A DNA stretch of 63,763 nt, filler included, from Octopus bimaculoides (lineage: Eukaryota): NCBI RefSeq assembly GCF_001194135.2. It is 5 parts of 5 records of this genome, joined end to end, with 100 filler letters (N's around TTAATTAATTAA, not from the genome) between each part and the next. Parts side by side here need not be neighbours in the genome. Positions count along the whole stretch, not along the records: positions 5,217 to 31,069 come from NC_068981.1; 4 more parts are not named here. One strand, 5' to 3'. The position numbers and the translations under genes were made by a program. This document shows, piece after piece, positions 6,863 to 31,069 of the stretch (position 1 is its first letter; each line of letters starts with the position of its first letter). The notes under the pieces are model-generated. The model searched no databases, was not told where the DNA came from, and worked only from the letters and a program-made list of their open reading frames with translations.

Positions 6863-9800
6863 ATGCACAAAATAGTTGAATATTTGCCTAAATTCAAATT
6901 GTCACTTCATCTCTATCATCAGGTAACTTCTGGAAAATCCTGTCAGCAAATATTGTTACAAGAAACAGTTATCTTACTATTCCAATTGAGTTTTGAATCG
7001 AAAAGAAATGGTTGGAATTTAACTTCTCTCTGCTTGGTCATTGCTTTTGAAAACAACTTAGCAATAATTCCTCTGCTAAAAAATGCAGACAAGTTGCACA
7101 GTACCAGGATATCAATTCAGTTTGTGATATTTTTCATTGCGAATAAATCAAATTCAGAGCATTTATTTTTTATATCTTATCCTGTCCATGAACTTGTAAC
7201 TGACATTTTAACAAGCAGTCACAACAACAAAATGTCTACAGATAAACATTCTTCTCTTAAATCAAGAAAATCCATCAAAAAGCATCGCTGTGAGTTCTGC
7301 AACAAAGAATTCATGAGCAGTTCTGCATTGGTTATTCATAGACGCTCACACACCGGCTTGCGTCCTTACAAATGTCCATTCTGCAGTCGAGCATTCTCTC
7401 AAATGACTGGAATCCAGCATCATATTCGCACTCACACCGGGGAGAGGCCATATGTTTGCAACATCTGCCATTTTAAATTTTCTCGCTCAGATTCTTTGGC
7501 CAGACACATAAAGAAGCGGCATTCGAGTGTTCAAAATGGATTGGTAAAGAGAAAAAAGAAAACTTCAGAAATATCAAAGAAGCAGCTACTGCTTAGCTAT
7601 TATAATAATTCCCACTCAGATCCTACTACTTCTCAGCTAACAGACTCTAGTTTTATGCTAAATGGCTTTCTTGATGTACCCACAGAATTTCAGTCTTCAA
7701 ATTTAGGAATTAATTCAGATGTACATATTACTGATGATTCTTCGAAAAATTCACGTCTTAAGTTCCCAGATGAAACACATTCTCATAATAAAGTAACTGA
7801 TTCTTTCATCAGAGATAAAAGATTTACGCACTCTAGAATACAATCTCCAAGATTGAGAACTAAATCCATGGATAAAAAATATTCATTTTCAAATTGTAAT
7901 TTACCTGAATTCAGGTATTCTGATGTAGCACACCAAAGAATTTCTGTTCCTCAAAATGAAATATCTGAAAATTCTAGGAAAAATTATAAAAGAACTGAAG
8001 AGACATCTTTGCTGCAGTCTAAAGTGAATAAAAGATGTAATTATAACCCAAATATAAGTTATGCTAATAATTTGGACAATATACACTTTAAAAATGTCAG
8101 TGATATAAGTATTTCCACAGAACTAGAATCTAAGCTTCATAATTACCAATATGCCAACAGAAGAAATCTGGATACAAAGAATGGTAAATATCACAAGTGT
8201 TTCTTCTGTTTCAAGTGTTTTGCAAGCAAGTCTGCATTGAACATACATAAAAGAATTCATACTGGCATTCGTCCCTATGTCTGCAAAATGTGTGGTCGTT
8301 CATTTACCCAAAAAACCGGTTTACGACATCATTATAGGACTCACACACAAGAAAGACCTTACAAATGTAGCATTTGCTTCTATGCATTCGCTAGATCTGA
8401 TTCTCTTTTGCGGCACACAAAACTTCGACACAAGAAGCTGAAGAAAAAAGCCCCTGTTTATAACAAACAATTAAGAAAACCACCTGAATGCTATCCTAAT
8501 TCAGAGCATTTTTTGGAAAAATCTGGTAGTTTTAAGCAAGTGGTACTTCAAAATGAAAACAATAATATATTTGAAAATGATCATCTGGTTGCAAAAAATG
8601 TTAACGATCTTGACATTCATGAATATTCTATTAGAAATAATACCAATTCCAACCATGTTTCAGTTGTTGATTCCACTCTGTTACTCGATCCATTAATAAC
8701 AGTTTCTGATGAAATCAATTATGGTAGGCATCATGTACAGTCCACAGACTTTAGCAACAGTAATTTGAGTTCTGGGGTCGTATTGAATATCGAGAGACCT
8801 GAAATCACTCGCACAAATTCTCCTATCTACATAACTGATGACGAAGAAGAATTTGATGTCATTTCATTCCCAGAAAAAAATGAAAATGTACCTGCTGTTA
8901 AATCCTGCTTGAAGCCCTCCACCAATTCTAAAAATACCACAGGAAAATATGGGAAAAAACGAAATCTTCCTTGTAATTTCTGTCACAAGACTTTCTCTAG
9001 TTTCTCGGTGCTGAAAGTTCACAGAAGAATCCACACTGGTGTTAGACCTTATCGGTGTAAGTTTTGTGGTCGTTCCTTTACCCAACAGACTGGTCTTACC
9101 CACCATCTACGCACTCACACTGGAGAAAAACCCTACTCTTGTGGGAACTGCAATGCGCAATTTTCCAGATCTGATTCCTTGGCTCGTCACTGGAGACAGC
9201 AGCATTTAAAACACTCTAACACAAAAGGTAATCATTTGAAACAGATAAATAGAACTAAGAAAGACCATGTTAGTTCAAGCAGCACTGACGAAAATTTAAG
9301 CATTTCAGCAAAGGATGTCAGGCTTTCTGAATCTGAAACAAATAATGTCCAAGAAATAAGTGACAATAATCCAAGTTTAGATCAGGTAAATTTTGCATCA
9401 GTTGTTATAAAATCTGAAGTTTCTAATGATGAACCTGTTCAGGCTGTTATCTGTGATACTTCTTCTAAAGATGAACCTGTTCAGGCTGTTATCTGTGATA
9501 CTTCTTCTAATGATGATGCTGGCACTGCTGACAAACTGGAAACTGACGATCTCAGTCCAACATGGAAAAGTGGCAGTAGTTATAGAGATGATGGAAATTT
9601 CAGCAATATTGAAATTGAAACCTTTGAACCAGTTCCAAATGCATTCAGTCCTTCCAATGAACCAAACCTACAGCTGAAATGTTCTTCATGCAAAAAAGTG
9701 TTTAACGACAAAACTCTATTATCTTCTCATGTGTGTGAGGTAAATACTGAATATCAATGTTTTCTTTGTGATATGAACTTTAACAATACCATCTTACTGG

Positions 9801-12800
9801 CCGAACATATGAGTGAACAGCATAATTTGAAACAAAACTGTAAAAGAGAAGGTGAGCTGTCACAATTTTCCTTCGAGGATGAATTCGGTTCTCTTGTAGA
9901 AATGGTAATCACCCATAATAATGATAGAGATGTTTGTCGTATTTATCTTAGTGACTTTTCTGAAAATACCCAAACCATAGAAATGAACATGGATGAGAAA
10001 ATCAATCAAAACCTTTCTGATATTTGGGAATCTACAGAGAATAGAAAACTTGAAGTTGCTCAACACTCTCCAAATGGTTTTGATTCTAAAGCGAACATTT
10101 TCTGCCAATCTGATTACAATGCAGGCACTATAAGTAACCACAAGGACAGTTCTGAAGATATTTTGCAAATTAAACTTGAGCAGGATCAACAGGAAATATC
10201 AGATATTGTCAGCCAAAACAATAGTAGCTTTGAATCTTTCTGCTTGACTAACCAGGAGCAAGAATTTCGCAATGCCCTTGAACCAAATACTAGCCCTCTT
10301 GGTACGCAGACAAATGGAATTAATTCTGAGGCTTCTAATTTTGTAGATAATAGCAGTGATGCTGGTATATCCATACCATTGCTGGATCTGAACCAGTGTA
10401 AGACAGAAGATAATGACAGCAACACTGCTCAGTTAAACAAAGATTCTAAGCAAACTAGACACAAACAGCGCCAGTGTGAATTCTGTAAGAAATCATTTAA
10501 TAGCAAATGGGCTTTGATTATTCACCGCAGATCCCACACTGGTGAAAAACCATATGAATGTGGGCACTGTGGCCGTGGTTTCAGTCAGTTATCTGGTGTT
10601 CAACATCATATTCTCACACATACTGGTGAGAGACCATTTGAGTGTCAAATTTGTCATTTCAAATTTGCTCGATCTGATTCATTAGTTCGACATACCAGAT
10701 TAAAACATTCAGAATGTGCAAGAGAAAATGGTTCGAAAGAGGAGCCCAAGAAAGTTTCAACACTTTCCAATGACCAAAGTTTAGTAAGGGACTTAAGGAA
10801 TGCATATAGTACAGATATGTTAGACATGGAGACAGATATACAAAACAATTGTACAATGATTGAACCAATGTTACAAGATAAAAACTTGATTAACTTATCA
10901 GAATATCCTTTGCTTCTTTCATCTCAAGTGAAGGAATCTGACACAAAGGAAAACATTGCTTCAAATTCTGAGGATCATATTACTTTGAAAGATATCCACA
11001 AGGAAGTTGATTTCGATAAGGATATTAAAAATTGCAACATGTTAGACTTGTCTTTATCTCCTTCAAAAGATATTTCTGCCAAGCAGATAAAAACTTTTGA
11101 TTGTAAATTTTGTGGGAGTCTGTTTCCAAATTCTGATGTTTTATTGCAACATTTAATGCTAAGTCATAGCAATGAAATTATTTTAAATGATATTAAAACA
11201 GATATCTTGCTCAAATCTGGGTCTGAGCAAAATAAGAATTCATCTCAAGATTTCCTTAGTATTTCCGAGTCCAAAGAAGCTTTAACATTTCATTCTAGTA
11301 ATGCTTCATCATTCACTGAAAATTGTCTGCAAAGGGATAGCATTTTGCATCTTTTAAAAGAGTATGATCTTGGTATGGTGACAGAGAATAATTCAACTTT
11401 GAATAGAGATGAAAGCAACCCTAATTTCAATGTTGATCTCAAATATATAGAAAATGTTGAAACTATTCCTTTAGACAGGTTAGAGCAAAATGGAGATGGT
11501 CAAGAAATGGACCAAAGTCAAAATTCTTTTCAAAATATCATTGATATTACAGAAACGAACTTTGATTTGAAAGAAACAAGTGTTGATGAAATCATAGAGA
11601 AAGATCTTAACACTAGTGAAGAAAAAAATCTGAAAGATGTAGATGTTGGCAATGTTGAAGAGAATAACAACAACAACAATAATAATGATGATGATGATGA
11701 TGATGTTATATGCATCACACCCGAGAATTTCCCTTCAAGTTTTCAGATGAATTCTTTGAAGGCTTTTGCTGAAGATTTTCATGTAACTGAAGAGAAAAGT
11801 TATGAAGCCTCTTACATGTCTCTCACAGATAACAACAACGTGAGTGCAAGGGAAGTAACCGAACAGTCTAACCGAAGTAATTCTTGTAGGTTTTGTGGCA
11901 AAAGTTTTCCTACTCAGTCAGCATTAAAAGTGCACCAACGCACCCATACCGGCCTGCGTCCATATAAGTGTCCAACATGTGGCAGAGCATTCACACAGAA
12001 AGTCGGACTCCAGCATCATGTCCGAACTCATACAGGAGAGCGGCCATATCAGTGTAAGTACTGCATTCAGAAGTTTGCTCGGTCAGATTCTTTGGGTCGG
12101 CACATAAGACACAAGCATTTAAAAGCAACCAAGGATTTGAATTCTGTGAGTAACTATCAGAAAAGCCTTGTATCTCCTTTGTCCTTAGAATCAGATGCAA
12201 ACCAAGAAGCAGCTAGAAAAAGAGAGATGAACGGAGGAAATTCCAATCAACTGGAATCGAATTTCATTGAGTCACAGGAACATTCTTCTAGTACAAATCC
12301 TAATCAAAAGGATTTTGTAATGATGACTCCAAATTCATTTGGAGACTTATTTGTATTGGAGCCATCAGACAACCATGTTAAGAATAATCTGAATGAATGT
12401 TTCCAAGAATACATTAGTTACTCTAGATTGAATGATGATAATCACATTGATAGGAAGACTTTGAATATATGTGACCAAATGGAAGAAAGGATGCAGAATA
12501 GTTCTTATTCGACTCCTAATGCTAGCCTACTACAGTCTTCTAGTAACACACCAGGCAAGTCATCTGACACAATTGTTTTGGAAGAGATGGCAATAAATAT
12601 AAGTGATTCTGAATGTAATTCACCTGAACAAAACACAACAATAAAATATGAAAATGATCTTACCTGTGATATTTGCTGTAAAGAATTCTCTAATTCACAC
12701 CTGTTAATAAAGCACCTAAAAGATCATATAAATGCTAGTAAAGAAACTGCAACCAATCCAGATAAGACCATCTCTGCTCCTGTCCCAACTTGTTATCTTA

Positions 12801-13528
12801 TAGACCTCAGTGATGAGAGCTTAGAACAAAAATCACAAAGTGAATTAGACATTGATCTAATGGAATCTGATTTGCTCTCAAATATAACCAAAGAAAAATG
12901 CATGGAAAACAAGAATGCAACTGAAATGCAAGAATTCAATTCAAGAACCGATCCAAAAATAGCCTCCTCTTCATTACCGAACCTGATAGATGATGATAGT
13001 CAAACCGAGATTGGTATTGAGAAAAATGCTGATAATTACCAGTTGGTTACAGAAACAGAAGACACTAACACAACAACCAGTGTTCTTTCTAATATGATTT
13101 CCCCGAATCTCCTGCCCCACCACACTAATGTGGTCTCGACAGGTACACGAGACAATATTACTTGCAGTAAAACCAATAACAACTCTCTTTTAATCATCAA
13201 AGACGGTACTAGATTTAAACTTGGCCACAAAAGGCACATTTGTAAGTACTGCAGCAAAAGTTTTGCAAGTTCTTCCGCCCTTGTGATTCACACTCGGACA
13301 CACACTGGTGAAAGGCCTTATGAATGTGATTATTGTTCACGAGCCTTCAGCCAGGTCACTGGTCTTCGTCACCATATCAGAACCCATACAGGGTATAAAC
13401 CATACAGCTGTCACTTCTGTTATTACCGATTTGCAAGATCAGATTCTTTAGCTAGGCACTTGAAACTGGAACACCAAAAGAGAAACAAAGATACCTCTTC
13501 AGGAAAAGATGTCAATGCTATACAATAA
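6863..13528 (+). CDS. Large single-exon C2H2 zinc-finger protein (2221 aa; alternative start ATG 7232 gives 2098 aa) with six three-finger clusters and four isolated fingers
   Basis: Uninterrupted 6.7-kb ORF in AT-rich DNA. Triple-finger clusters with TGERP-type linkers lie at 7283-7522, 8192-8431, 8966-9205, 10469-10708, 11879-12118 and 13235-13474. Single fingers lie near 9674, 9752, 11096 and 12659. No KRAB, SCAN, BTB or ZAD domain recognised. Confidence 0.95.
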   Translation: MHKIVEYLPKFKLSLHLYHQVTSGKSCQQILLQETVILLFQLSFESKRNGWNLTSLCLVIAFENNLAIIPLLKNADKLHSTRISIQFVIFFIANKSNSEHLFFISYPVHELVTDILTSSHNNKMSTDKHSSLKSRKSIKKHRCEFCNKEFMSSSALVIHRRSHTGLRPYKCPFCSRAFSQMTGIQHHIRTHTGERPYVCNICHFKFSRSDSLARHIKKRHSSVQNGLVKRKKKTSEISKKQLLLSYYNNSHSDPTTSQLTDSSFMLNGFLDVPTEFQSSNLGINSDVHITDDSSKNSRLKFPDETHSHNKVTDSFIRDKRFTHSRIQSPRLRTKSMDKKYSFSNCNLPEFRYSDVAHQRISVPQNEISENSRKNYKRTEETSLLQSKVNKRCNYNPNISYANNLDNIHFKNVSDISISTELESKLHNYQYANRRNLDTKNGKYHKCFFCFKCFASKSALNIHKRIHTGIRPYVCKMCGRSFTQKTGLRHHYRTHTQERPYKCSICFYAFARSDSLLRHTKLRHKKLKKKAPVYNKQLRKPPECYPNSEHFLEKSGSFKQVVLQNENNNIFENDHLVAKNVNDLDIHEYSIRNNTNSNHVSVVDSTLLLDPLITVSDEINYGRHHVQSTDFSNSNLSSGVVLNIERPEITRTNSPIYITDDEEEFDVISFPEKNENVPAVKSCLKPSTNSKNTTGKYGKKRNLPCNFCHKTFSSFSVLKVHRRIHTGVRPYRCKFCGRSFTQQTGLTHHLRTHTGEKPYSCGNCNAQFSRSDSLARHWRQQHLKHSNTKGNHLKQINRTKKDHVSSSSTDENLSISAKDVRLSESETNNVQEISDNNPSLDQVNFASVVIKSEVSNDEPVQAVICDTSSKDEPVQAVICDTSSNDDAGTADKLETDDLSPTWKSGSSYRDDGNFSNIEIETFEPVPNAFSPSNEPNLQLKCSSCKKVFNDKTLLSSHVCEVNTEYQCFLCDMNFNNTILLAEHMSEQHNLKQNCKREGELSQFSFEDEFGSLVEMVITHNNDRDVCRIYLSDFSENTQTIEMNMDEKINQNLSDIWESTENRKLEVAQHSPNGFDSKANIFCQSDYNAGTISNHKDSSEDILQIKLEQDQQEISDIVSQNNSSFESFCLTNQEQEFRNALEPNTSPLGTQTNGINSEASNFVDNSSDAGISIPLLDLNQCKTEDNDSNTAQLNKDSKQTRHKQRQCEFCKKSFNSKWALIIHRRSHTGEKPYECGHCGRGFSQLSGVQHHILTHTGERPFECQICHFKFARSDSLVRHTRLKHSECARENGSKEEPKKVSTLSNDQSLVRDLRNAYSTDMLDMETDIQNNCTMIEPMLQDKNLINLSEYPLLLSSQVKESDTKENIASNSEDHITLKDIHKEVDFDKDIKNCNMLDLSLSPSKDISAKQIKTFDCKFCGSLFPNSDVLLQHLMLSHSNEIILNDIKTDILLKSGSEQNKNSSQDFLSISESKEALTFHSSNASSFTENCLQRDSILHLLKEYDLGMVTENNSTLNRDESNPNFNVDLKYIENVETIPLDRLEQNGDGQEMDQSQNSFQNIIDITETNFDLKETSVDEIIEKDLNTSEEKNLKDVDVGNVEENNNNNNNNDDDDDDVICITPENFPSSFQMNSLKAFAEDFHVTEEKSYEASYMSLTDNNNVSAREVTEQSNRSNSCRFCGKSFPTQSALKVHQRTHTGLRPYKCPTCGRAFTQKVGLQHHVRTHTGERPYQCKYCIQKFARSDSLGRHIRHKHLKATKDLNSVSNYQKSLVSPLSLESDANQEAARKREMNGGNSNQLESNFIESQEHSSSTNPNQKDFVMMTPNSFGDLFVLEPSDNHVKNNLNECFQEYISYSRLNDDNHIDRKTLNICDQMEERMQNSSYSTPNASLLQSSSNTPGKSSDTIVLEEMAINISDSECNSPEQNTTIKYENDLTCDICCKEFSNSHLLIKHLKDHINASKETATNPDKTISAPVPTCYLIDLSDESLEQKSQSELDIDLMESDLLSNITKEKCMENKNATEMQEFNSRTDPKIASSSLPNLIDDDSQTEIGIEKNADNYQLVTETEDTNTTTSVLSNMISPNLLPHHTNVVSTGTRDNITCSKTNNNSLLIIKDGTRFKLGHKRHICKYCSKSFASSSALVIHTRTHTGERPYECDYCSRAFSQVTGLRHHIRTHTGYKPYSCHFCYYRFARSDSLARHLKLEHQKRNKDTSSGKDVNAIQ
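9421..9513 (+). repeat. In-frame 42-bp tandem duplication inside the ZNF ORF (DEPVQAVICDTSS x2)
   Basis: The period of 42 nt is visible from ttctaa at 9421, 9463 and 9505. The two units differ at one base. Confidence 0.9.
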
Positions 13529-15854: not shown

Positions 15855-16118
15855 TCATTACCTTCCTGGCACTTGAAAAGACATTCAAGCGAGATCGTTG
15901 CCAGTACCTCCTGACCGGCCTTCATGCCGGTGGCACTTAAAAGCACCCACTACACTCTCAGAGTGGATGACGTTAGGAAAGGCATCCAGCTGTAGAAACT
16001 ATGCCAAATCAGATTGGAGCCTGGTGTAGCCATCTGGTTTCACCAGTCCTCAGTCAAATTGTCCAACCCATGCTAGCATGGAAAGCGGACGTTCAATGAT
16101 GATGATGATGATGATGAT
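15855..16118 (+). mobile_element. SINE family A
   Basis: Same tail as 5217-5470, ending in (GAT)n. Confidence 0.8.
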
Positions 16119-16405
16119 TGCTCCTTTAAGTATTAACAATAGACCATTGAGAGGAAAGTCAATACTCATCACTTTGGAAACCATGGTAATTAGGTGCAAT
16201 TCCACAGATCATTGAGAATAGAGAATGAAAACACCTCCATACACTACAAAAAAATTAAACTTTCCAATATTAGTTAAACAATTTTCTTATTTGATGTTTT
16301 TTTCTTTTAAACTTTATGCAATTCCTCTAACCTGAAGAATAAACAGAATGTTAAAGAATTCTTGCTACTCCCAACAACATTAAGATGAGTTAAAATGACT
16401 GGAAA

Positions 16406-16635
16406 TCATCATCATCATCATCATTTAATGTCCGCCTTCCATGCTAGCATGGGTTGGACGATTTGACTGAGGACTGGTGAAACCAGATGGCTACACCAGG
16501 CTCCAATCTGATTTGACAGAGTTTCTACAGCTGGATGCCCTTCCTAACGCCAACCACTCCGAGAGTGTAGTGGGTGCTTTTACGTGCCACCGGCACAAAG
16601 GCCAGTCAGGCAATGGGTCATGCTCAAAATGGTGT
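16406..16635 (-). mobile_element. SINE family A (inverted relative to the 15855 copy)
   Basis: Reverse complement of the family A tail with (ATC)n at 16406. Confidence 0.8.
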
Positions 16636-17258: not shown

Positions 17259-18440
17259 TTCTATTTATAAATATCCTAGAATATCTAGAATATCACATTG
17301 CCTTGGCCTTGTTATCTTATTATATATATNNNNNNNNNNNNNNNNNNNNNNNNNNNNNNNNNNNNNNNNNNNNNNNNNNNNNNNNNNNNNNNNNNNNNNN
17401 NNNNNNNNNNNNNNNNNNNNNNNNNNNNNNNNNNNNNNNNNNNNNNNNNNNNNNNNNNNNNNNNNNNNNNNNNNNNNNNNNNNNNNNNNNNNNNNNNNNN
17501 NNNNNNNNNNNNNNNNNNNNNNNNNNNNNNNNNNNNNNNNNNNNNNNNNNNNNNNNNNNNNNNNNNNNNNNNNNNNNNNNNNNNNNNNNNNNNNNNNNNN
17601 NNNNNNNNNNNNNNNNNNGGGGGGGGGGGCAGTTGTGGACACATTTCTACCTCAATAGGCATTATCAACAGAGCACTTGTCCAACCTCAGGGCTATTAGA
17701 GATACAAGGCTTAGTCTTATACCATAAAATAACACATGGCCCAGGTAATCTGCATAATTGAAACAAAAATGAGCTGAGAGGTCAGTGGCTGGCATTTGAA
17801 CGACATTCACAAATACAGGTATATCAAATACCATACAACATAAATTTTTAATTTATCTCCACTTCTAGAAGTGTTGTAACTCCCACACACGCACACATGG
17901 ATACACACACACACACAAATTAAGGATATGTAGCATTTTGATTGTAGGATGTCTAAATCTTGCAAGCTGACCAAGTACACTATCTGAATGGACAAACGAA
18001 CTAATCCCTGAAAAGTTTTTTGAACAAGTTATATTTTATTTTTTGTAAAATTCAAAATTGCAATGCCTGTTCATTAGGGTATATCAGCAAAGAATATACA
18101 CACAAAAAAAGAAATATATATATAGATATATATAAATACATGAATATATTATATAATAATAATTCTATACAACGAGTACAAAAAGAGTATTTAATACTAA
18201 ATTGTGTGTGTGAATATACGTGTAGTTTTTCTTACAACTGATCAAATAAAACGGTGAGAAAACAGTCAGAAGTGATTGGTAATCAGAACACTGCCGATTA
18301 CGTCATATGCTTCGTTCAAGTGAATACATTTATATATACATTCATTGATGGGCAGTGTTTCAATTCTCGCAGCTGAAATACCGTTATACTTGAAAGAATT
18401 GTAGTTATCTCTTAATTATTATTATTTTTTTTTAACGTGT

Positions 18441-18923
18441 CTAGGCTACAAATTCGTACCGCACTGGTTCTAGTAGAGTAGGTTTATTTTTAGCAATTGA
18501 TACAAAGTGCCTTTTTACAGGACCTGCGGGCTGTCTCTTTAAACAAACGCGAACTCCTTTAGCTTTTGCTTCAGTCTTCAGTTTACTACATTCGACAATT
18601 CTCTTACGGAAATCTTCTTGACACTTGGATGGTTTCACGTGTTCGATTCTCAGGTTGATTCTCTTTGGGATGATGCGATGCTTCACTCGTTTATTGATGA
18701 TCACCCCAACGGCGTGTTGTGTTACGTTGAAGACTCGACCCGTACGACCGTGGTAAGATTTATGTGGCATACCTTTTTGTACACCTCCGTCACCTTTAAC
18801 ATCGACCAAGTCGCCACGTTTATAAACTTTCATGTAAGTGGACAGCGGAAGGACTCCGTGGCGCCTGAAGGCTCTGGCGAACATATGCCGGGTCCCCCGG
18901 CGATAACCTTTTGTGTTTGTCAT
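18441..18923 (-). CDS. RPL21: 60S ribosomal protein L21 (eL21), copy 1, intronless CDS
   Basis: Intact 160-aa [15 protein letters not shown]...[26 protein letters not shown]...KRQP...YEFVA with the hallmark eL21 motifs. Confidence 0.96.
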
Positions 18924-18939
18924 TGTAAATTAAGGGAAG

Positions 18940-24770: not shown

Positions 24771-24803
<33 letters not shown>

Positions 24804-25628
24804 NNNNNNNNNNNNNNNNNNNNNNNNNNNNNNNNNNNNNNNNNNNNNNNNNNNNNNNNNNNNNNNNNNNNNNNNNNNNNNNNNNNNNNNNNNNNNNNNN
24901 NNNNNNNNNNNNNNNNNNNNNNNNNNNNNNNNNNNNNNNNNNNNNNNNNNNNNNNNNNNNNNNNNNNNNNNNNNNNNNNNNNNNNNNNNNNNNNNNNNNN
25001 NNNNNNNNNNNNNNNNNNNNNNNNNNNNNNNNNNNNNNNNNNNNNNNNNNNNNNNNNNNNNNNNNNNNNNNNNNNNNNNNNNNNNNNNNNNNNNNNNNNN
25101 NNNNNNNNNNNNNNNNNNNNNNNNNNNNNNNNNNNNNNNNNNNNNNNNNNNNNNNNNNNNNNNNNNNNNNNNNNNNNNNNNNNNNNNNNNNNNNNNNNNN
25201 NNNNNNNNNNNNNNNNNNNNNNNNNNNNNNNNNNNNNNNNNNNNNNNNNNNNNNNNNNNNNNNNNNNNNNNNNNNNNNNNNNNNNNNNNNNNNNNNNNNN
25301 NNNNNNNNNNNNNNNNNNNNNNNNNNNNNNNNNNNNNNNNNNNNNNNNNNNNNNNNNNNNNNNNNNNNNNNNNNNNNNNNNNNNNNNNNNNNNNNNNNNN
25401 NNNNNNNNNNNNNNNNNNNNNNNNNNNNNNNNNNNNNNNNNNNNNNNNNNNNNNNNNNNNNNNNNNNNNNNNNNNNNNNNNNNNNNNNNNNNNNNNNNNN
25501 NNNNNNNNNNNNNNNNNNNNNNNNNNNNNNNNNNNNNNNNNNNNNNNNNAAATGTTTCCTGATCATAAATTAACTAATTTAAATTTTATATTTGCTGCTA
25601 ATATCATAGTAATTTATATGTTGTTGTT

Positions 25629-25979: not shown

Positions 25980-26290
25980 ACAGTAATTTATAAAACCAGT
26001 AAAGAAAGTTTATTTAATGAAAGAAAGGGAGACAACTGCTGCTATTCCTTATTTATCTCTCTTAGTCAGCTTCTTCCTTAACTGTTGCGCCCTCTAGTAG
26101 GAAGGAAGTGTAAATTATATTCCAAGGGAGTTAAAACCTTCCTTTTTAGCTTTGGCCACCATATTGTACGCACGTACAACGTGGTCTGTTGTCGAGAAAA
26201 GTCAGTATATACTGGACTTTTGCTGCTGAGACTGAACCAGACTTGGTGAAATCGTTGTCTTACTATAGCAGGAACTAAATATTTGCGAAA

Positions 26291-26773
26291 ATGACAAATA
26301 CAAAAGGTTATCGTCGCGGTACTCGGCACATGTTTGCCAGGAGATTCCGCCGCCATGGAGTCCTTCCTCTGTCTACTTATATGAAAGTCTACAAACGTGG
26401 CGATTTGGTCGATGTTAAAGGTGATGGAGGTGTACAAAAAGGTATGCCACATAAATCTTACCACGGTCGTACGGGTCGAGTCTTCAACGTAACACAACAC
26501 GCCGTCGGTGTGATCGTCAACAAACGAGTGAAGCATCGCATCATCCCAAAGAGAATCAACCTGAGAATCGAACACGTGAACCCATCCAAATGTCAAGAAG
26601 ATTACCGTAAGAGAATCGTCGAATGTAGTAAACTGAAAGCTGAAGCAAAAGCTAAAGGAGTCCGCGTTTGTTTGAAGAGACAGCCTGCAGGTCCTGTAAA
26701 AAGGCACTTTGTATCAATTGCTAAAAATAAGCCCACAGTCTTGGAACCAATCCCCTATGAATTCGTGGCATAA
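26291..26773 (+). CDS. RPL21: 60S ribosomal protein L21 (eL21), copy 2, intronless CDS
   Basis: Intact 160-aa ORF with 152/160 residues identical to copy 1. It ends in the canonical LEPIPYEF motif. Confidence 0.96.
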
Positions 26774-29424: not shown

Positions 29425-29570
29425 CACTCCATCGTCGTTTAACGTCCGTTTTCTATGCTGGCATAGGTTGGACGGTTTGACTGAGGGCTGGTGAACCAGA
29501 AGGCTGCACCAGGCTCCAATCTGATCTGGCAAAGTTTCTACAGCTGGATGCCCTTCCTAATGCCAATCAC
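29425..29570 (-). mobile_element. SINE family A fragment
   Basis: Contains tccgttttctatgctggcataggttggacgg...ctacagctggatgcccttcctaatgccaa. Confidence 0.65.
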
Positions 29571-30569
29571 TCAGAGTATATGTGGGTGTGTGCTTGTGTC
29601 ACCATTGTACTAGTAGTATCTTTCATTTACATTCTTCTGTGAAGACTTGTCTAGCCACAGGAGAAATAATGCCTTGTTTGGAAACAAGGGAGGGTTGTTG
29701 ACAAGAAGGTATCCAACCATAGAAAATCTGCCTCAATGAATTCTTTCTGACCCATGCTTGCATGGAAAAGTGGACATTAAAATTATGCTTATTTTGGGTC
29801 TAAGTATTTTTGAAGCTTGTTATCTTACTCAGCTACAACTGGCTGAAAAATCTGCTCACTGCAAGCCCTTTCCAACCACACAGATACTGTGAGGAAGATA
29901 AAGACATTTTAGAATTTTAAAGACAAACTATCCCAAAACCAAATAATTTACTGTACACTACATGTTTTGGGTTGTTACAATCAATTATGGTAAGAAAATA
30001 CTTATGGGCATCTCTCAAACTATTAACCATTTTACAGAGGTAAATATCCTCTTCCTTGTATAGGTCATCTCATAAATGATATATACATATTGTCATAATT
30101 TTATCCACTTTTTCTATGCTTACATGTGTCAGATGGAGTTCATTGAAATAGGATTTTTATAACCAGCTGTCCTTGTCACTAACCTTTACCTATTTCAAAA
30201 TAAAGTAAGATTTTTCGGTAATCACTCGGATTGAGCCTCAGAATTGTCAGTTTCTGTGGAAAGTTTATTCATTTACTTTTGAGGTGTCGAAGTGGAAGAA
30301 GAAGCTAATGGGTGTGTATATGAGTGTGAGCATGTTCTGTTTTATGTATTTGTATTCACTGACATGTTTGATAAAAACTGTTGCATTTTAAATATGCAAG
30401 GCTTTTCTGAAGTCCAAAATGCGACGCTGTTTTTGTTAGCATGTGTGTGTTAGTGGGTGGCATTAATGAAGATGTTGCGTGTTAATTTAATGTGTTAAAT
30501 TTAACTTTATTAATGTATCTCAGATATATACAAGTGATATAGCCAAGTGAGACCTAAAGCCAAAGCCTC

Positions 30570-31069
30570 TGCCAGGATGCATCGCTTGCGAAGACCTGTT
30601 GAGGCAAGTGAAATCTAATCAATTTCGACGGATGGCACCCATGCCAACATCGTCTCCTTCATTGGAAACAGAAACTCGGCTTGCGAAGACCTTTTGAGGC
30701 AAGCAAAATCATGGTAGCACGTGTAAGGACATTCAAGTGAGATCGTTGCCAGTGCCACTGGACTGGCTCCCATGCAGGTGGCACGTAAAAGACACCATTT
30801 CAAGCGTGGCCGTTGCCAGTACCCGCCTGACTGGCCTTCGTACCAGTGGCATGTAAAAGCACCCACTACACTCTCGGAGTGGTTGGCGTTAGGAACGGCA
30901 TCCAGCTGTAGAAACTCTGCTAAATCAGATTGGAGCCTGGTGTAACCACCTGGTTCACCAGTCCTCAGTCAAATTGTCCAACCCATGCTAGCATGGGTTG
31001 GACGATTTGACTAAGGACTGGTGAAACTGGATGGCAAAACCAGGCTCCAATCTAATTTGGCAGAGTTTC
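30570..31069 (+). mobile_element. Long SINE family A copy fused tail-to-tail to an inverted second copy
   Basis: The + copy runs to ccatgctagcatgg (30983-30996). The sequence then continues as a diverged reverse-complement copy up to the gap. Confidence 0.75.

What the first reader, a model, noticed from the sequence alone, without database searches (positions are those of the whole stretch)
7283..13474. Hexavalent zinc-finger protein: six dispersed, exactly 80-aa three-finger modules sharing one recognition code
Seen: all six clusters are 240 nt long, and the third finger always ends H-x4-H. The recognition helices are conserved across modules. F1 = [S/T]xSALxxH (SSSALVI, SKSALNI, SFSVLKV, SKWALII, TQSALKV, SSSALVI). 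F2 = QxTGLxHH (QMTGIQH, QKTGLRH, QQTGLTH, QLSGVQH, QKVGLQH, QVTGLRH). F3 = RSDSLxRH in all six. The 178-421 aa spacers are acidic/Ser/Asn-rich and do not align by eye. Established: most expanded C2H2 genes are contiguous arrays with diversified contact residues, and R-1/D2/R6 helices read G-N-G. Inference: this protein keeps six copies of the same ~9-bp reader (roughly 5'-G[C/T]G-NNA-NNN) on long flexible tethers. That suits multivalent binding, looping or compaction of a highly repeated motif (SINE, microsatellite or satellite) rather than single-site regulation. It is a candidate KRAB-independent repeat-binding or architectural factor.
Basis: partly seen in the sequence, partly recalled or inferred. 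Interest (0 to 1): 0.8.

Follow-up and report, generated by a model that had tools for sequence, protein, structure and literature searches.

The report
Octopus protein with six matching zinc-finger modules
This is a real, intact, octopus-lineage gene for a giant nuclear zinc-finger protein. It carries six old copies of one three-finger DNA reader on long flexible tethers, a design that suits gripping clustered or repeated DNA sites, although at least four other giant genes in the same genome share that design.

Summary
One uninterrupted ORF (6863/7232–13528, +) encodes six gap-free 80-aa three-finger modules at the stated coordinates.

- **Contact residues:** those of fingers 2 (Q/G/H) and 3 (R/D/S/R) are identical in all 24 modules from four octopod species.
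- **Age:** the duplications are old. Synonymous sites between modules are saturated, and each module has its own 88–91% identical counterpart in Argonauta.
- **Constraint:** all six modules are equally constrained (dN/dS 0.04–0.09, against 0.34 for the spacers).
- **Copy number:** the gene is single-copy. Its finger-2 and finger-3 helices are nearly private to it within a 2.3-Gb genome.
- **Identity:** it is annotated "ZNF236-like" but is not the ZNF236 orthologue, which lies on another chromosome.

The design is not unique. At least four other giant uninterrupted ORFs (about 2,300–2,800 aa) in this genome repeat their own private modules, and ZNF236 and ZAS/HIVEP proteins do so on a smaller scale.

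Engineered fingers with the same helix (RSDSLLR/RSDSLTR) were designed for or selected on GTG. Multivalent binding of clustered GTG-containing sites is therefore a reasonable inference, but it is untested.

The parts
6863..13528 (+). Complete intronless coding sequence (2221 aa plus TAA) as annotated in Octopus species. The core from the second in-frame ATG at 7232 (2098 aa) is the part annotated in Argonauta.
   Evidence: ORF. The cluster member of 2221 aa lies on the window's own contig. The Argonauta gene is one uninterrupted ORF, L017:3001-9141. O. vulgaris is 95% identical and Argonauta 57–62% over the full length.
6863..7231 (+). N-terminal leader of 123 aa, hydrophobic, with no known domain. 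It is probably translated.
   Evidence: The frame has 0 stops in Octopus and Argonauta, against 5–12 stops in the other two frames. There is one 6-nt indel and dN/dS is 0.48. Only 0.16% of neutral simulations keep the frame open. Pfam finds nothing and AF2 gives pLDDT 37.
7283..7522 (+). Module 1. Helices: SSSALVI / QMTGIQH / RSDSLAR, ending H-x4-H.
   Evidence: It is 88% identical to Argonauta module 1 and has dN/dS 0.038.
8192..8431 (+). Module 2. Helices: SKSALNI / QKTGLRH / RSDSLLR.
   Evidence: It is 91% identical to Argonauta module 2 and has dN/dS 0.047. RSDSLLR was assigned to GTG in PMC3077364.
8966..9205 (+). Module 3. Helices: SFSVLKV / QQTGLTH / RSDSLAR.
   Evidence: It is 90% identical to its orthologue and has dN/dS 0.085.
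10469..10708 (+). Module 4. Helices: SKWALII / QLSGVQH / RSDSLVR. The Trp at finger-1 position +2 is specific to this module in all four species.
   Evidence: dN/dS is 0.042.
11879..12118 (+). Module 5. Helices: TQSALKV / QKVGLQH / RSDSLGR.
   Evidence: dN/dS is 0.041.
13235..13474 (+). Module 6. Helices: SSSALVI / QVTGLRH / RSDSLAR.
   Evidence: dN/dS is 0.043.
9677..9823 (+). Pair of non-canonical 'LL' fingers in spacer 3: KCSSCKKVFNDKTLLSSHVC (degenerate, C2-H-C) and YQCFLCDMNFNNTILLAEHMSEQH.
Evidence: Both are conserved in Argonauta.
9851..9967 (+). Conserved acidic and hydrophobic island, GELSQFSFEDEFGSLVEMVITH…RIYLSDFSEN.
   Evidence: It is nearly invariant between Octopus and Argonauta. 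AF2 does not fold it (pLDDT 38.6). Only the two octopod orthologues match the surrounding region among 5.8 billion proteins.
11096..11167 (+). Isolated 'LL' finger in spacer 4, FDCKFCGSLFPNSDVLLQHLMLSH.
12659..12727 (+). Isolated 'LL' finger in spacer 5, LTCDICCKEFSNSHLLIKHLKDH. It lies in a block that is about 96% conserved with Argonauta.
8819..8851 (+). SUMO-interaction-motif-like element, SPIYITDDEEE.
   Evidence: Conserved in Argonauta, coordinates. The motif assignment rests on resemblance only.
11687..11731 (+). SUMO-interaction-motif-like element, DDDDDDVICITPENF.
   Evidence: Resemblance only.
12791..12832 (+). SUMO-interaction-motif-like element, CYLIDLSDESLEQK.
   Evidence: Resemblance only.
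9421..9516 (+). In-frame 42-nt tandem duplication (2.3 copies) encoding DEPVQAVICDTSS twice.
   Evidence: Tandem Repeats Finder result. O. vulgaris and Argonauta each have a single copy.

Best explanation
The window carries a single-copy, intronless gene of Octopus bimaculoides. The gene encodes a nuclear C2H2 zinc-finger protein of about 2,100–2,200 aa and has been found so far only in octopods (Octopus species and Argonauta).

Six paralogous three-finger DNA-binding modules were created by ancient internal duplications. Since then they have been kept under strong and equal purifying selection that acts on the base-contact residues. Each module has canonical TGE(K/R)P-type linkers.

**Inferred mechanism.**
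- Each module reads essentially the same short site. Finger 3 (R-1, D2, S3, R6) reads 5'-GTG. Finger 2 (Q-1) places an A at the third base of the next triplet. Finger 1 (S/A/I) contributes little specificity.
- Such a short site is common in any genome. Useful specificity would therefore come from avidity, with several of the six modules engaging clustered or tandemly repeated copies, or copies on different DNA segments.
- The modules sit on 178–421-residue low-complexity tethers. The C-terminal three tethers are strongly acidic and carry isolated fingers and SIM-like motifs, which probably recruit partners and may damp non-specific DNA binding.

**Status of each step.** Shown here: the anatomy, selection, age, uniqueness of the helices, and non-orthology to ZNF236. 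Inferred: DNA binding itself, the identity of the motif, multivalent engagement, and any role in chromatin architecture or repeat silencing.
For: - **Anatomy:**
- **Old duplications:** pS between modules is 0.74–0.94, and only 30% of conserved residues use the same codon.
- **No concerted evolution:** identity is 0.88–0.91 on the diagonal against 0.53–0.69 off it.
- **Equal constraint on all six modules:** dN/dS is 0.038–0.085, against 0.34 for the spacers.
- **Contact residues:** finger-2 positions -1/3/6 and finger-3 positions -1/2/3/6 are invariant in 24 of 24 modules, while +1 and +5 vary freely.
- **Comparison with controls:** contact identity is 0.82 against 0.27±0.13.
- **Single copy:** in the own genome the six modules score 102–176 bits and the next hit scores 87 bits.
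- **Rare helices:**
- **Finger-3 specificity:** RSDSLLR was assigned to GTG (PMC3077364) and RSDSLTR was selected on GTG/ATG (PMC1920264).
- **Tethers:** low complexity with polarised charge and no detectable internal similarity.
- **Precedents:** same-code dispersed modules binding one consensus are known in ZAS proteins (PMC3048431). Zinc-finger proteins that bind satellite repeats directly are also known, namely ZNF512 and ZNF512B (PMC13537249).
Against: - No binding data of any kind exist for this protein.
- The specificity of finger 2 (His at +6) and finger 1 cannot be read from simple rules.
- Module-specific residues could give related but different sites. These are the Trp at finger-1 +2 in module 4, the Val at finger-2 +2 in module 5, and the variable +1/+5 positions.
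- A four-species alignment spanning one deep split is shallow, and dS of about 1 makes the dN/dS values rough.
- Absence from squid, cuttlefish and Nautilus rests only on protein databases, not on their genomes.
- The SIM assignment is resemblance only. Both AF2 attempts on non-finger regions failed.
Confidence: 0.55

Rival explanations
1. It is an ordinary multi-site transcription factor. The six modules read related but distinct sequences, tuned by +1/+5 and the module-specific residues. They are used singly or in subsets at different promoters or enhancers, with no repeat or avidity logic.
For: - Module-specific substitutions are fixed in all four species: W at finger-1 +2 in module 4, V at finger-2 +2 in module 5, and T at finger-1 -1 in module 5.
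- Each module keeps its own identity over a long time, which fits non-redundant roles.
- Overall module identity is only 52–66%.
Against: The canonical contact residues of fingers 2 and 3 are identical in all modules. The residues that differ most (+1, +5) usually matter least for base choice. Keeping the same code in six copies past synonymous saturation is hard to explain if different sites were wanted.
Confidence: 0.22
2. The modules are not mainly double-stranded-DNA readers. They bind RNA, single-stranded or structured nucleic acid, or proteins, and the protein is a scaffold.
For: - Finger 1 has a helix poor in typical base-contacting residues (S/S/A/I).
- His at +6 in finger 2 is unusual, at 1% of control fingers.
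- The protein has four extra fingers with hydrophobic LL helices and several protein-interaction-like motifs.
Against: - The canonical H-T-G-E/L-K/R-P-Y/F linkers and the classic R-1/D2/R6 finger 3 are hallmarks of DNA-binding arrays.
- The closest solved structures by sequence are all DNA-bound arrays: ZNF568, Aart, PRDM9, CTCF and Zif268.
- Helices identical or near-identical to finger 3 were designed for or selected on DNA in engineered proteins.
Confidence: 0.1
3. It is the cephalopod orthologue of ZNF236, as the public annotation implies, so the architecture is already known.
For: - RefSeq and UniProt names are "zinc finger protein 236-like".
- ZNF236 proteins appear among the hits.
- ZNF236 also has dispersed, duplicated modules.
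Against: - A lungfish ZNF236 module finds its best match elsewhere in this genome, at G000:C4:108578824-108579111 (71% identity, 153 bits). It does not list this locus among its 68 hits.
- ZNF236 helices (KPSDLVR/VKSTLTA/TSGSLKV/TSGHRKT and others, in the order C-A-B-B-A-C) share nothing specific with this protein's helices.
- Identity to ZNF236 proteins is 22–29% over 15–49% of the query.
Confidence: 0.03
4. The shared code is a by-product of recent duplication or gene conversion between the modules, not of selection.
For: Internal repeats in zinc-finger genes often homogenise. One recent in-frame 42-nt tandem duplication does exist in spacer 3.
Against: - Synonymous sites between modules are saturated (pS 0.74–0.94).
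- Third-position identity is 0.34–0.50, against 0.28 expected at random.
- Modules pair strictly by position, not by species, across the Octopus–Argonauta split.
Confidence: 0.02

Closest known systems
Other giant 'module-repeat' zinc-finger genes of octopods. Uninterrupted ORFs read in this genome: G000:C4:95.06 Mb, 2778 aa (= O. vulgaris LOC115211127); G000:C2:144.87 Mb, about 2500 aa (= O. sinensis LOC115208765); G000:C20:26.76 Mb, 2330 aa. Also O. bimaculoides LOC106883442, 2405 aa, seen as a protein model on chromosome 5.
   Same: - Each is 2,300–2,800 aa, and the three read here are single uninterrupted ORFs.
- Each has 5–9 dispersed modules of 3–5 fingers that share one private recognition code within the protein.
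- Isolated odd fingers sit between the modules.
- Argonauta has counterparts of the C2 and C5 genes.
- The C4 gene shows the same pattern of contact identity 0.73 against 0.27 at +1/+5, and it shares the finger-1 helix type S.SAL.[IV].
   Different: Each gene has its own code (for example Q.AHLDV/Q..N..R, or VHGNLIK/NPSNLTR). By score, their modules are no closer to this gene's modules than generic fingers are (81–85 bits against 87 for the best generic hit). Common descent is therefore not shown. It is a shared design, not a demonstrated family.
ZNF236 (the name given by automatic annotation)
   Same: It is a very large protein with finger clusters separated by long linkers, and it has duplicated modules with conserved helices. 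The lungfish protein has three module types, each present twice, in the order C-A-B-B-A-C.
   Different: - ZNF236 has two copies of each of three module types, mostly of four fingers. This protein has six copies of one three-finger module.
- The helices are different.
- The true ZNF236 orthologue lies elsewhere in this genome.
- In the literature held here, ZNF236 has no described DNA-binding mechanism.
ZAS / HIVEP / Schnurri proteins
   Same: These are unusually large proteins whose widely separated finger modules each bind the same consensus. The modules are accompanied by acidic and Ser/Thr-rich regions (PMC3048431). This is the clearest precedent for one reader repeated on long tethers.
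   Different: ZAS proteins have two pairs of fingers, not six triplets, and they bind a kappaB-like GGGGNNNNCC site. No sequence relationship appeared in any search here.
ZNF512 / ZNF512B (mammalian satellite-binding zinc-finger proteins)
   Same: These zinc-finger proteins bind concentrated repeat DNA directly and recruit SUV39H (PMC13537249). From my own recollection of the primary paper, which I did not check here, long linkers between their fingers let them read non-adjacent short motifs.
   Different: Their fingers are unrelated and their architecture differs. They are vertebrate proteins with experimentally shown function, whereas nothing has been shown for this protein.
Zif268/EGR-type three-finger domain and engineered RSD-type fingers
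   Same: It is a three-finger unit with canonical linkers. The finger-3 helix RSDSLxR belongs to the RSDxLxR class. RSDSLLR was assigned to GTG and RSDSLTR was selected on GTG/ATG.
   Different: Fingers 1 and 2 are unlike EGR fingers, and EGR has one module, not six.
Lineage-specific C2H2 expansions of coleoid cephalopods
   Same: Same organismal background and same fold. Cephalopod C2H2 genes are heavily expanded (PMC12513265).
   Different: This gene is single-copy. No other zinc-finger ORF lies in the 26-kb piece and no paralogue carries its code. Its contact residues are conserved, not diversified.

Membership tests
Classical C2H2 (Krüppel-type) zinc-finger proteins | C-x2-4-C-x12-H-x3-5-H fingers that match Pfam PF00096, joined by TGEKP-like linkers | tested here: met
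   PF00096 scores E=3.8e-76 with 16 stretches, and PF13465 scores E=9e-71. The regex finds 21 fingers. The linkers HTG[LIVE][RK]PY and HTGE[RK]P[YF] are visible in the alignment.
ZNF236 orthologues | Best reciprocal match to ZNF236 within the genome | tested here: not met
   A lungfish ZNF236 module hits G000:C4:108578824-108579111 (71% identity, 153 bits). The window's locus is not among its 68 hits at E≤1e-20.
ZNF236 orthologues | ZNF236 module set: KPSQ.TR/QKxALQx/QKxNxxx, KPSDLxR/VKSTLxx/TxGSLKV/TSGxRKx and KSSHLKQ/xAGVxKx/TxGSLxR/TxLxCKK, each present twice | tested here: not met
   Finger maps compared. None of these helices occurs in the window's protein.
KRAB zinc-finger proteins | N-terminal KRAB domain (PF01352) | tested here: not met
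   Neither the whole-protein scan nor the leader scan finds a KRAB, SCAN, BTB or ZAD domain.
ZAS / HIVEP / Schnurri | Two widely separated ZAS domains, each a pair of C2H2 fingers plus an acidic region plus a Ser/Thr-rich region | tested here: not met
   This protein has triplets, not pairs, and six of them, not two. Acidic Ser-rich regions flank only modules 4–6. No HIVEP protein appears among the listed hits. The resemblance is functional only.
Giant module-repeat zinc-finger genes of octopods (informal class defined here) | A single uninterrupted ORF of more than 2,000 aa with five or more dispersed modules sharing one recognition code, and isolated fingers between modules | tested here: met
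   This gene. Other members.
Giant module-repeat zinc-finger genes of octopods (informal class defined here) | Common ancestry of the member genes | tested here: inconclusive
   Modules of the C4 gene score no better against this gene's module than generic fingers do. Only the finger-1 helix type S.SAL.[IV] and the arrangement of an isolated finger before each triplet are shared.
Sequence-specific double-stranded-DNA binders that read GTG through finger 3 | Demonstrated binding of the modules to DNA | not testable with these tools
   The only evidence is the analogy to engineered fingers with the same helix.
SUMO-interacting proteins | Functional SIMs, meaning a hydrophobic core of 3–4 residues flanked by acidic or Ser residues that binds SUMO | not testable with these tools
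   Four conserved motifs fit the pattern by eye: IYITDDEEE, RIYLSDFSE, DDDDDDVICI and LIDLSDES. There is no binding test, and AF2 was uninformative.

The most novel reading that the evidence does not exclude
Octopods have evolved a small class of giant, intronless module-repeat zinc-finger proteins. At least five were seen in this genome and a further one in O. vulgaris, and three of them have Argonauta counterparts. Each carries 5–9 copies of a private multi-finger reader on long disordered tethers.

These proteins would act as multivalent clamps on lineage-specific clustered or tandem DNA motifs. For this gene the motif would contain GTG, for example GT-rich microsatellites or a SINE family. 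They would organise heterochromatin or three-dimensional genome contacts through SUMO-dependent partners. That would be a repeat-handling system built without KRAB/TRIM28.
Probability: 0.2. Interest if true: 0.75.

Novelty: new variant of a known kind. Interest (0 to 1): 0.5.

Why it matters
Most of what is known about large C2H2 families concerns tandem arrays whose contact residues diversify to chase new targets. Here the opposite has been maintained for a very long time. One short reader is copied six times, its contact residues are frozen, and everything around it is free to drift. Several other giant genes in the same genome follow the same rule.

If the modules do bind one motif, this gene would be a natural example of specificity through avidity. 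It would also be a candidate architectural or repeat-binding factor in a lineage known for a large, repeat-rich and rearranged genome.

The claim is easy to test, because each 80-aa module can be assayed alone. The annotation "ZNF236-like" should not be read as orthology.

Tried and rejected
1. **Profile of the six modules against 1.84 billion representative proteins.** The list is dominated by generic poly-finger proteins, with 225,244 hits. Only the Argonauta orthologue carries the triplet (regex). Per-domain scores are not returned, so weaker relatives below the top 150 cannot be excluded.
2. **Three word-indexed protein searches.** They covered the whole length, the non-finger island 790–940, and the C-terminal 549 aa. 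Only O. vulgaris, O. sinensis and Argonauta orthologues were found. No shorter ancestral form and no squid, cuttlefish or Nautilus protein appeared.
3. **Spacer against spacer local alignments with shuffles.** Nothing was significant, so a larger repeat unit of isolated finger plus triplet is suggested only by order, not by sequence.
4. **AF2 on the 142-aa N-terminus and on the conserved island.** pLDDT was 37 and 39, so no fold search was run.
5. **PDB sequence search with one module.** Only generic DNA-bound arrays were returned.
6. **ZNF236 orthology.** Rejected.
7. **Gene conversion as the cause of similarity.** Rejected.
8. **Literature search for a described class of same-code dispersed clusters.** Nothing specific was found.
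9. **A motif-enrichment scan of the genome for GTG..A-type sites.** I did not attempt it. The predicted site is too loose and the genome cannot be read whole here, so any result would have been uninterpretable.

Full report
**What is in the sequence.**

Between 6791 and 13528 the + strand is open for 2245 codons. A regex and Pfam agree on 21 C2H2 fingers (PF00096 E=3.8e-76, with no KRAB, SCAN, BTB or ZAD domain).

Each triplet is 80 aa from two residues before the first Cys to the last His. The six align without a gap, 35 of 80 columns are invariant, and every third finger ends H-x4-H. The helices are as quoted. Spacers are 223, 178, 421, 390 and 372 aa. They show no similarity to each other beyond shuffled controls.

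**Where it comes from.**

The window is G000:C1:30205566-30236690 in a 2.34-Gb assembly. One (127,476,059) is the contig of a protein named for Octopus bimaculoides, and the other (199,874,329) carries the 2221-aa member of this protein's cluster. I therefore take the organism to be O. bimaculoides.

Full-length relatives exist in three species. O. vulgaris is 95% identical. O. sinensis (XP_029635960.1) is in the same 90% cluster. Argonauta hians is 57–62% identical. The Argonauta gene is also one uninterrupted ORF.

**Is the shared code more than chance or recent copying?**

Between paralogous modules, amino-acid identity is 52–66%. Third-codon-position identity is only 0.34–0.50, against 0.28 expected from composition. 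pS is 0.74–0.94, which is saturated.

Octopus and Argonauta modules pair strictly by position. Identity is 0.88–0.91 on the diagonal and 0.53–0.69 off it. The six-module state therefore predates that split, and there has been no homogenisation since.

dN/dS between the two genera is 0.038–0.085 for each of the six modules and 0.34 for the spacers. dS is about 1, so these values are rough.

Across 24 modules from four species, finger-2 positions -1/+3/+6 (Q, G, H) and finger-3 positions -1/+2/+3/+6 (R, D, S, R) never change. Finger-1 contacts vary only conservatively, and in a module-specific way (S/T, S/W, A/V, I/V). The +1 and +5 positions vary freely.

Their mean contact-position identity is 0.27±0.13. 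This protein scores 0.82, with only 0.30 at +1/+5.

The helices are also rare.
- RSDSL.R occurs in 0 of 8814 control fingers, and Q..G..H in 2 of 8814.
- In the whole genome, a degenerate DNA pattern for Q..G..HH..TH gives 35 matches against 24 for the reversed control. Six are this gene and about three others look like fingers.
- The pattern for F.RSDSL.RH gives 27 against 7. Six are here and about three true cases lie elsewhere.
- A protein search of the genome with module 6 returns the six modules at 102–176 bits and then a step down to 87 bits.

The gene is single-copy and has no paralogue with this code.

1. **Four further fingers** carry hydrophobic "LL" helices (F-x-[ND]-x3-LL-x2-H). 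A pair lies in spacer 3 (9677–9823; its first member is degenerate). One lies in spacer 4 (11096–11167) and one in spacer 5 (12659–12727). All are conserved in Argonauta.
2. **Short conserved motifs** look like SUMO-interaction motifs: SPIYITDDEEE, RIYLSDFSEN, DDDDDDVICITP and CYLIDLSDESLEQK. This rests on resemblance only.
3. **The charge is polarised.** Modules carry +7 to +15. Spacer 1 is basic and spacer 2 is neutral. Spacers 3–5 carry -25 to -44. "Acidic spacers" is therefore true only for the C-terminal half.
4. **The 123 codons upstream of the conserved Met (6863–7231) are probably coding.**
   - The frame has no stop in Octopus or Argonauta, while the other two frames have 5–12 stops.
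   - The two species differ by one 6-nt indel, and dN/dS is 0.48.
   - Only 0.16% of neutral simulations keep the frame open.
   - The leader matches no Pfam family, and AF2 gives pLDDT 37.

**What it is not.**

Public names call it "zinc finger protein 236-like". A ZNF236 module from lungfish finds a 71% identical exon at G000:C4:108578824-108579111 and does not list this locus among its hits. ZNF236's helices are entirely different. The name is a best-hit label, not orthology.

**The design is not unique.**

Among the session's hits, several other octopod proteins show the same rule. I confirmed three as uninterrupted ORFs in this genome.
- The 2778-aa ORF on C4 has nine triplets S.SAL.. / Q.AHLDV / Q..N..R.
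- The ORF of about 2500 aa on C2 has seven modules VHGNLIK / NPSNLTR / ASSNL...
- The 2330-aa ORF on C20 has about six modules Q..HL.Y / TSSDL.R / Q.SNL...
- LOC106883442 on C5 has five or six modules of 4–5 fingers. I saw it as a protein model only.

Argonauta has counterparts of the C2 and C5 genes with the same codes. O. vulgaris has a further 2116-aa protein with dispersed Q..HL../DRSNL.T pairs.

A chiton protein repeats a module of roughly nine fingers three times. Lungfish ZNF236 has three module types, each twice, in the order C-A-B-B-A-C.

By score, the modules of these genes are no closer to this gene's modules than generic fingers are. I therefore treat this as a shared design and not as a proven family.

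**How it most likely works.**

Shown:
- The modules are canonical fingers with canonical linkers.
- The closest solved relatives are DNA-bound arrays.
- Selection acts on the base-contact residues.

From the literature: the exact finger-3 helix of module 2, RSDSLLR, was the finger assigned to the GTG triplet in an engineered nuclease (PMC3077364). RSDSLTR was selected on GTG and ATG (PMC1920264).

From established recognition rules: Gln at -1 in finger 2 favours A at the 3' base of its triplet. Asp at +2 in finger 3 favours G or T at the 5' base of the neighbouring triplet.

Inference: each module reads roughly 5'-GTG-(G/T)NA-NNN. Finger 1 (S/S/A/I) and His +6 of finger 2 are of uncertain contribution.

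A site that short is common in any genome. Six copies of one weak-to-moderate reader on low-complexity tethers of 180–420 residues make most sense as an avidity device for clustered or tandem copies, or for bridging separate DNA segments.

The acidic C-terminal tethers could compete with non-specific DNA. The isolated fingers and SIM-like motifs could recruit partners.

Precedents:
- ZAS/HIVEP proteins have two widely separated finger modules that each bind the same consensus, next to acidic and Ser/Thr-rich regions (PMC3048431).
- ZNF512 and ZNF512B bind satellite repeats directly and recruit SUV39H (PMC13537249).

None of the binding steps is tested for this protein.

**Dead ends.**

- The exhaustive profile search was swamped by generic poly-finger proteins, and only Argonauta carried the triplet among the top 150.
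- The two extra word-indexed searches found no shorter or more distant relative.
- Both structure predictions of non-finger regions were of low confidence.
- No paper in the library describes this gene or this class.

**Verdict.**

The mechanistic part, multivalent binding of repeated motifs, is a sensible but untested inference.

Novelty is moderate. This is an uncharacterised, lineage-restricted and extreme version of a design that has precedents, and it recurs in at least four other giant genes in the same genome.

Noticed in passing
window 6863-7231: The 123-codon leader upstream of the conserved Met is stop-free in Octopus and Argonauta. The two differ by one 6-nt indel, dN/dS is 0.48, and 0.16% of neutral simulations keep the frame open. 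It is hydrophobic and matches no known domain. The Argonauta gene model probably starts too late.
   Followed up: yes
window 9677-9823, 11096-11167, 12659-12727: Four extra non-canonical fingers share F-x-[ND]-x3-LL-x2-H helices. One or two sit in each of spacers 3–5, always N-terminal to the next triplet. They are conserved in Argonauta. The C4 giant gene likewise has an isolated finger about 35 aa before many of its triplets, which hints that the original repeat unit was an isolated finger plus a triplet.
   Followed up: partly
window 8819-8851, 9938-9967, 11687-11731, 12791-12832: Conserved hydrophobic-plus-acidic motifs (IYITDDEEE, RIYLSDFSEN, DDDDDDVICITP, LIDLSDES) resemble SUMO-interaction motifs.
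   Followed up: partly
window 9421-9516: An in-frame 42-nt tandem duplication (2.3 copies, 96% matches) doubles DEPVQAVICDTSS in spacer 3. O. vulgaris and Argonauta each have one copy, so it is recent in this lineage.
   Followed up: partly
window 18442-18924 (-) and 26290-26772 (+): Two intronless, intact ribosomal protein L21 reading frames (160–161 aa, PF01157 E about 1e-45) lie in inverted orientation 7.4 kb apart. They are 90% identical, and the similarity ends at the coding sequence. They look like processed copies that have stayed open.
   Followed up: partly
window about 17330-17640 and about 24800-25550: Runs of N (assembly gaps) are flanked by (AT)n/(TA)n and TG/CA-rich microsatellites. 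They create spurious long open frames in all six frames.
   Followed up: no
window 15869-16611, 29455-29576, 30717-31069: Several copies, direct and inverted, of a 130–200-nt dispersed repeat are 87–93% identical. The repeat is probably a SINE. One pair forms a 206-nt inverted repeat with a 289-nt loop at 15910-16610.
   Followed up: no
G000:C4:95063500-95073499 (L018), G000:C2:144874500-144884499 (L019), G000:C20:26756500-26766499 (L020): Three further giant uninterrupted ORFs (2778 aa, at least 2468 aa, and 2330 aa) carry 6–9 dispersed modules. Each ORF repeats its own private recognition helices.
   Followed up: partly
G000:C4:108578824-108579111 (L013): An exon is 71% identical to a lungfish ZNF236 four-finger module. 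This is the likely true ZNF236 orthologue of this genome.
   Followed up: partly
protein P0035 (lungfish ZNF236): The finger modules of ZNF236 are arranged as a mirror-like series C-A-B-B-A-C, and each module type keeps its helices. I have not seen this described.
   Followed up: no
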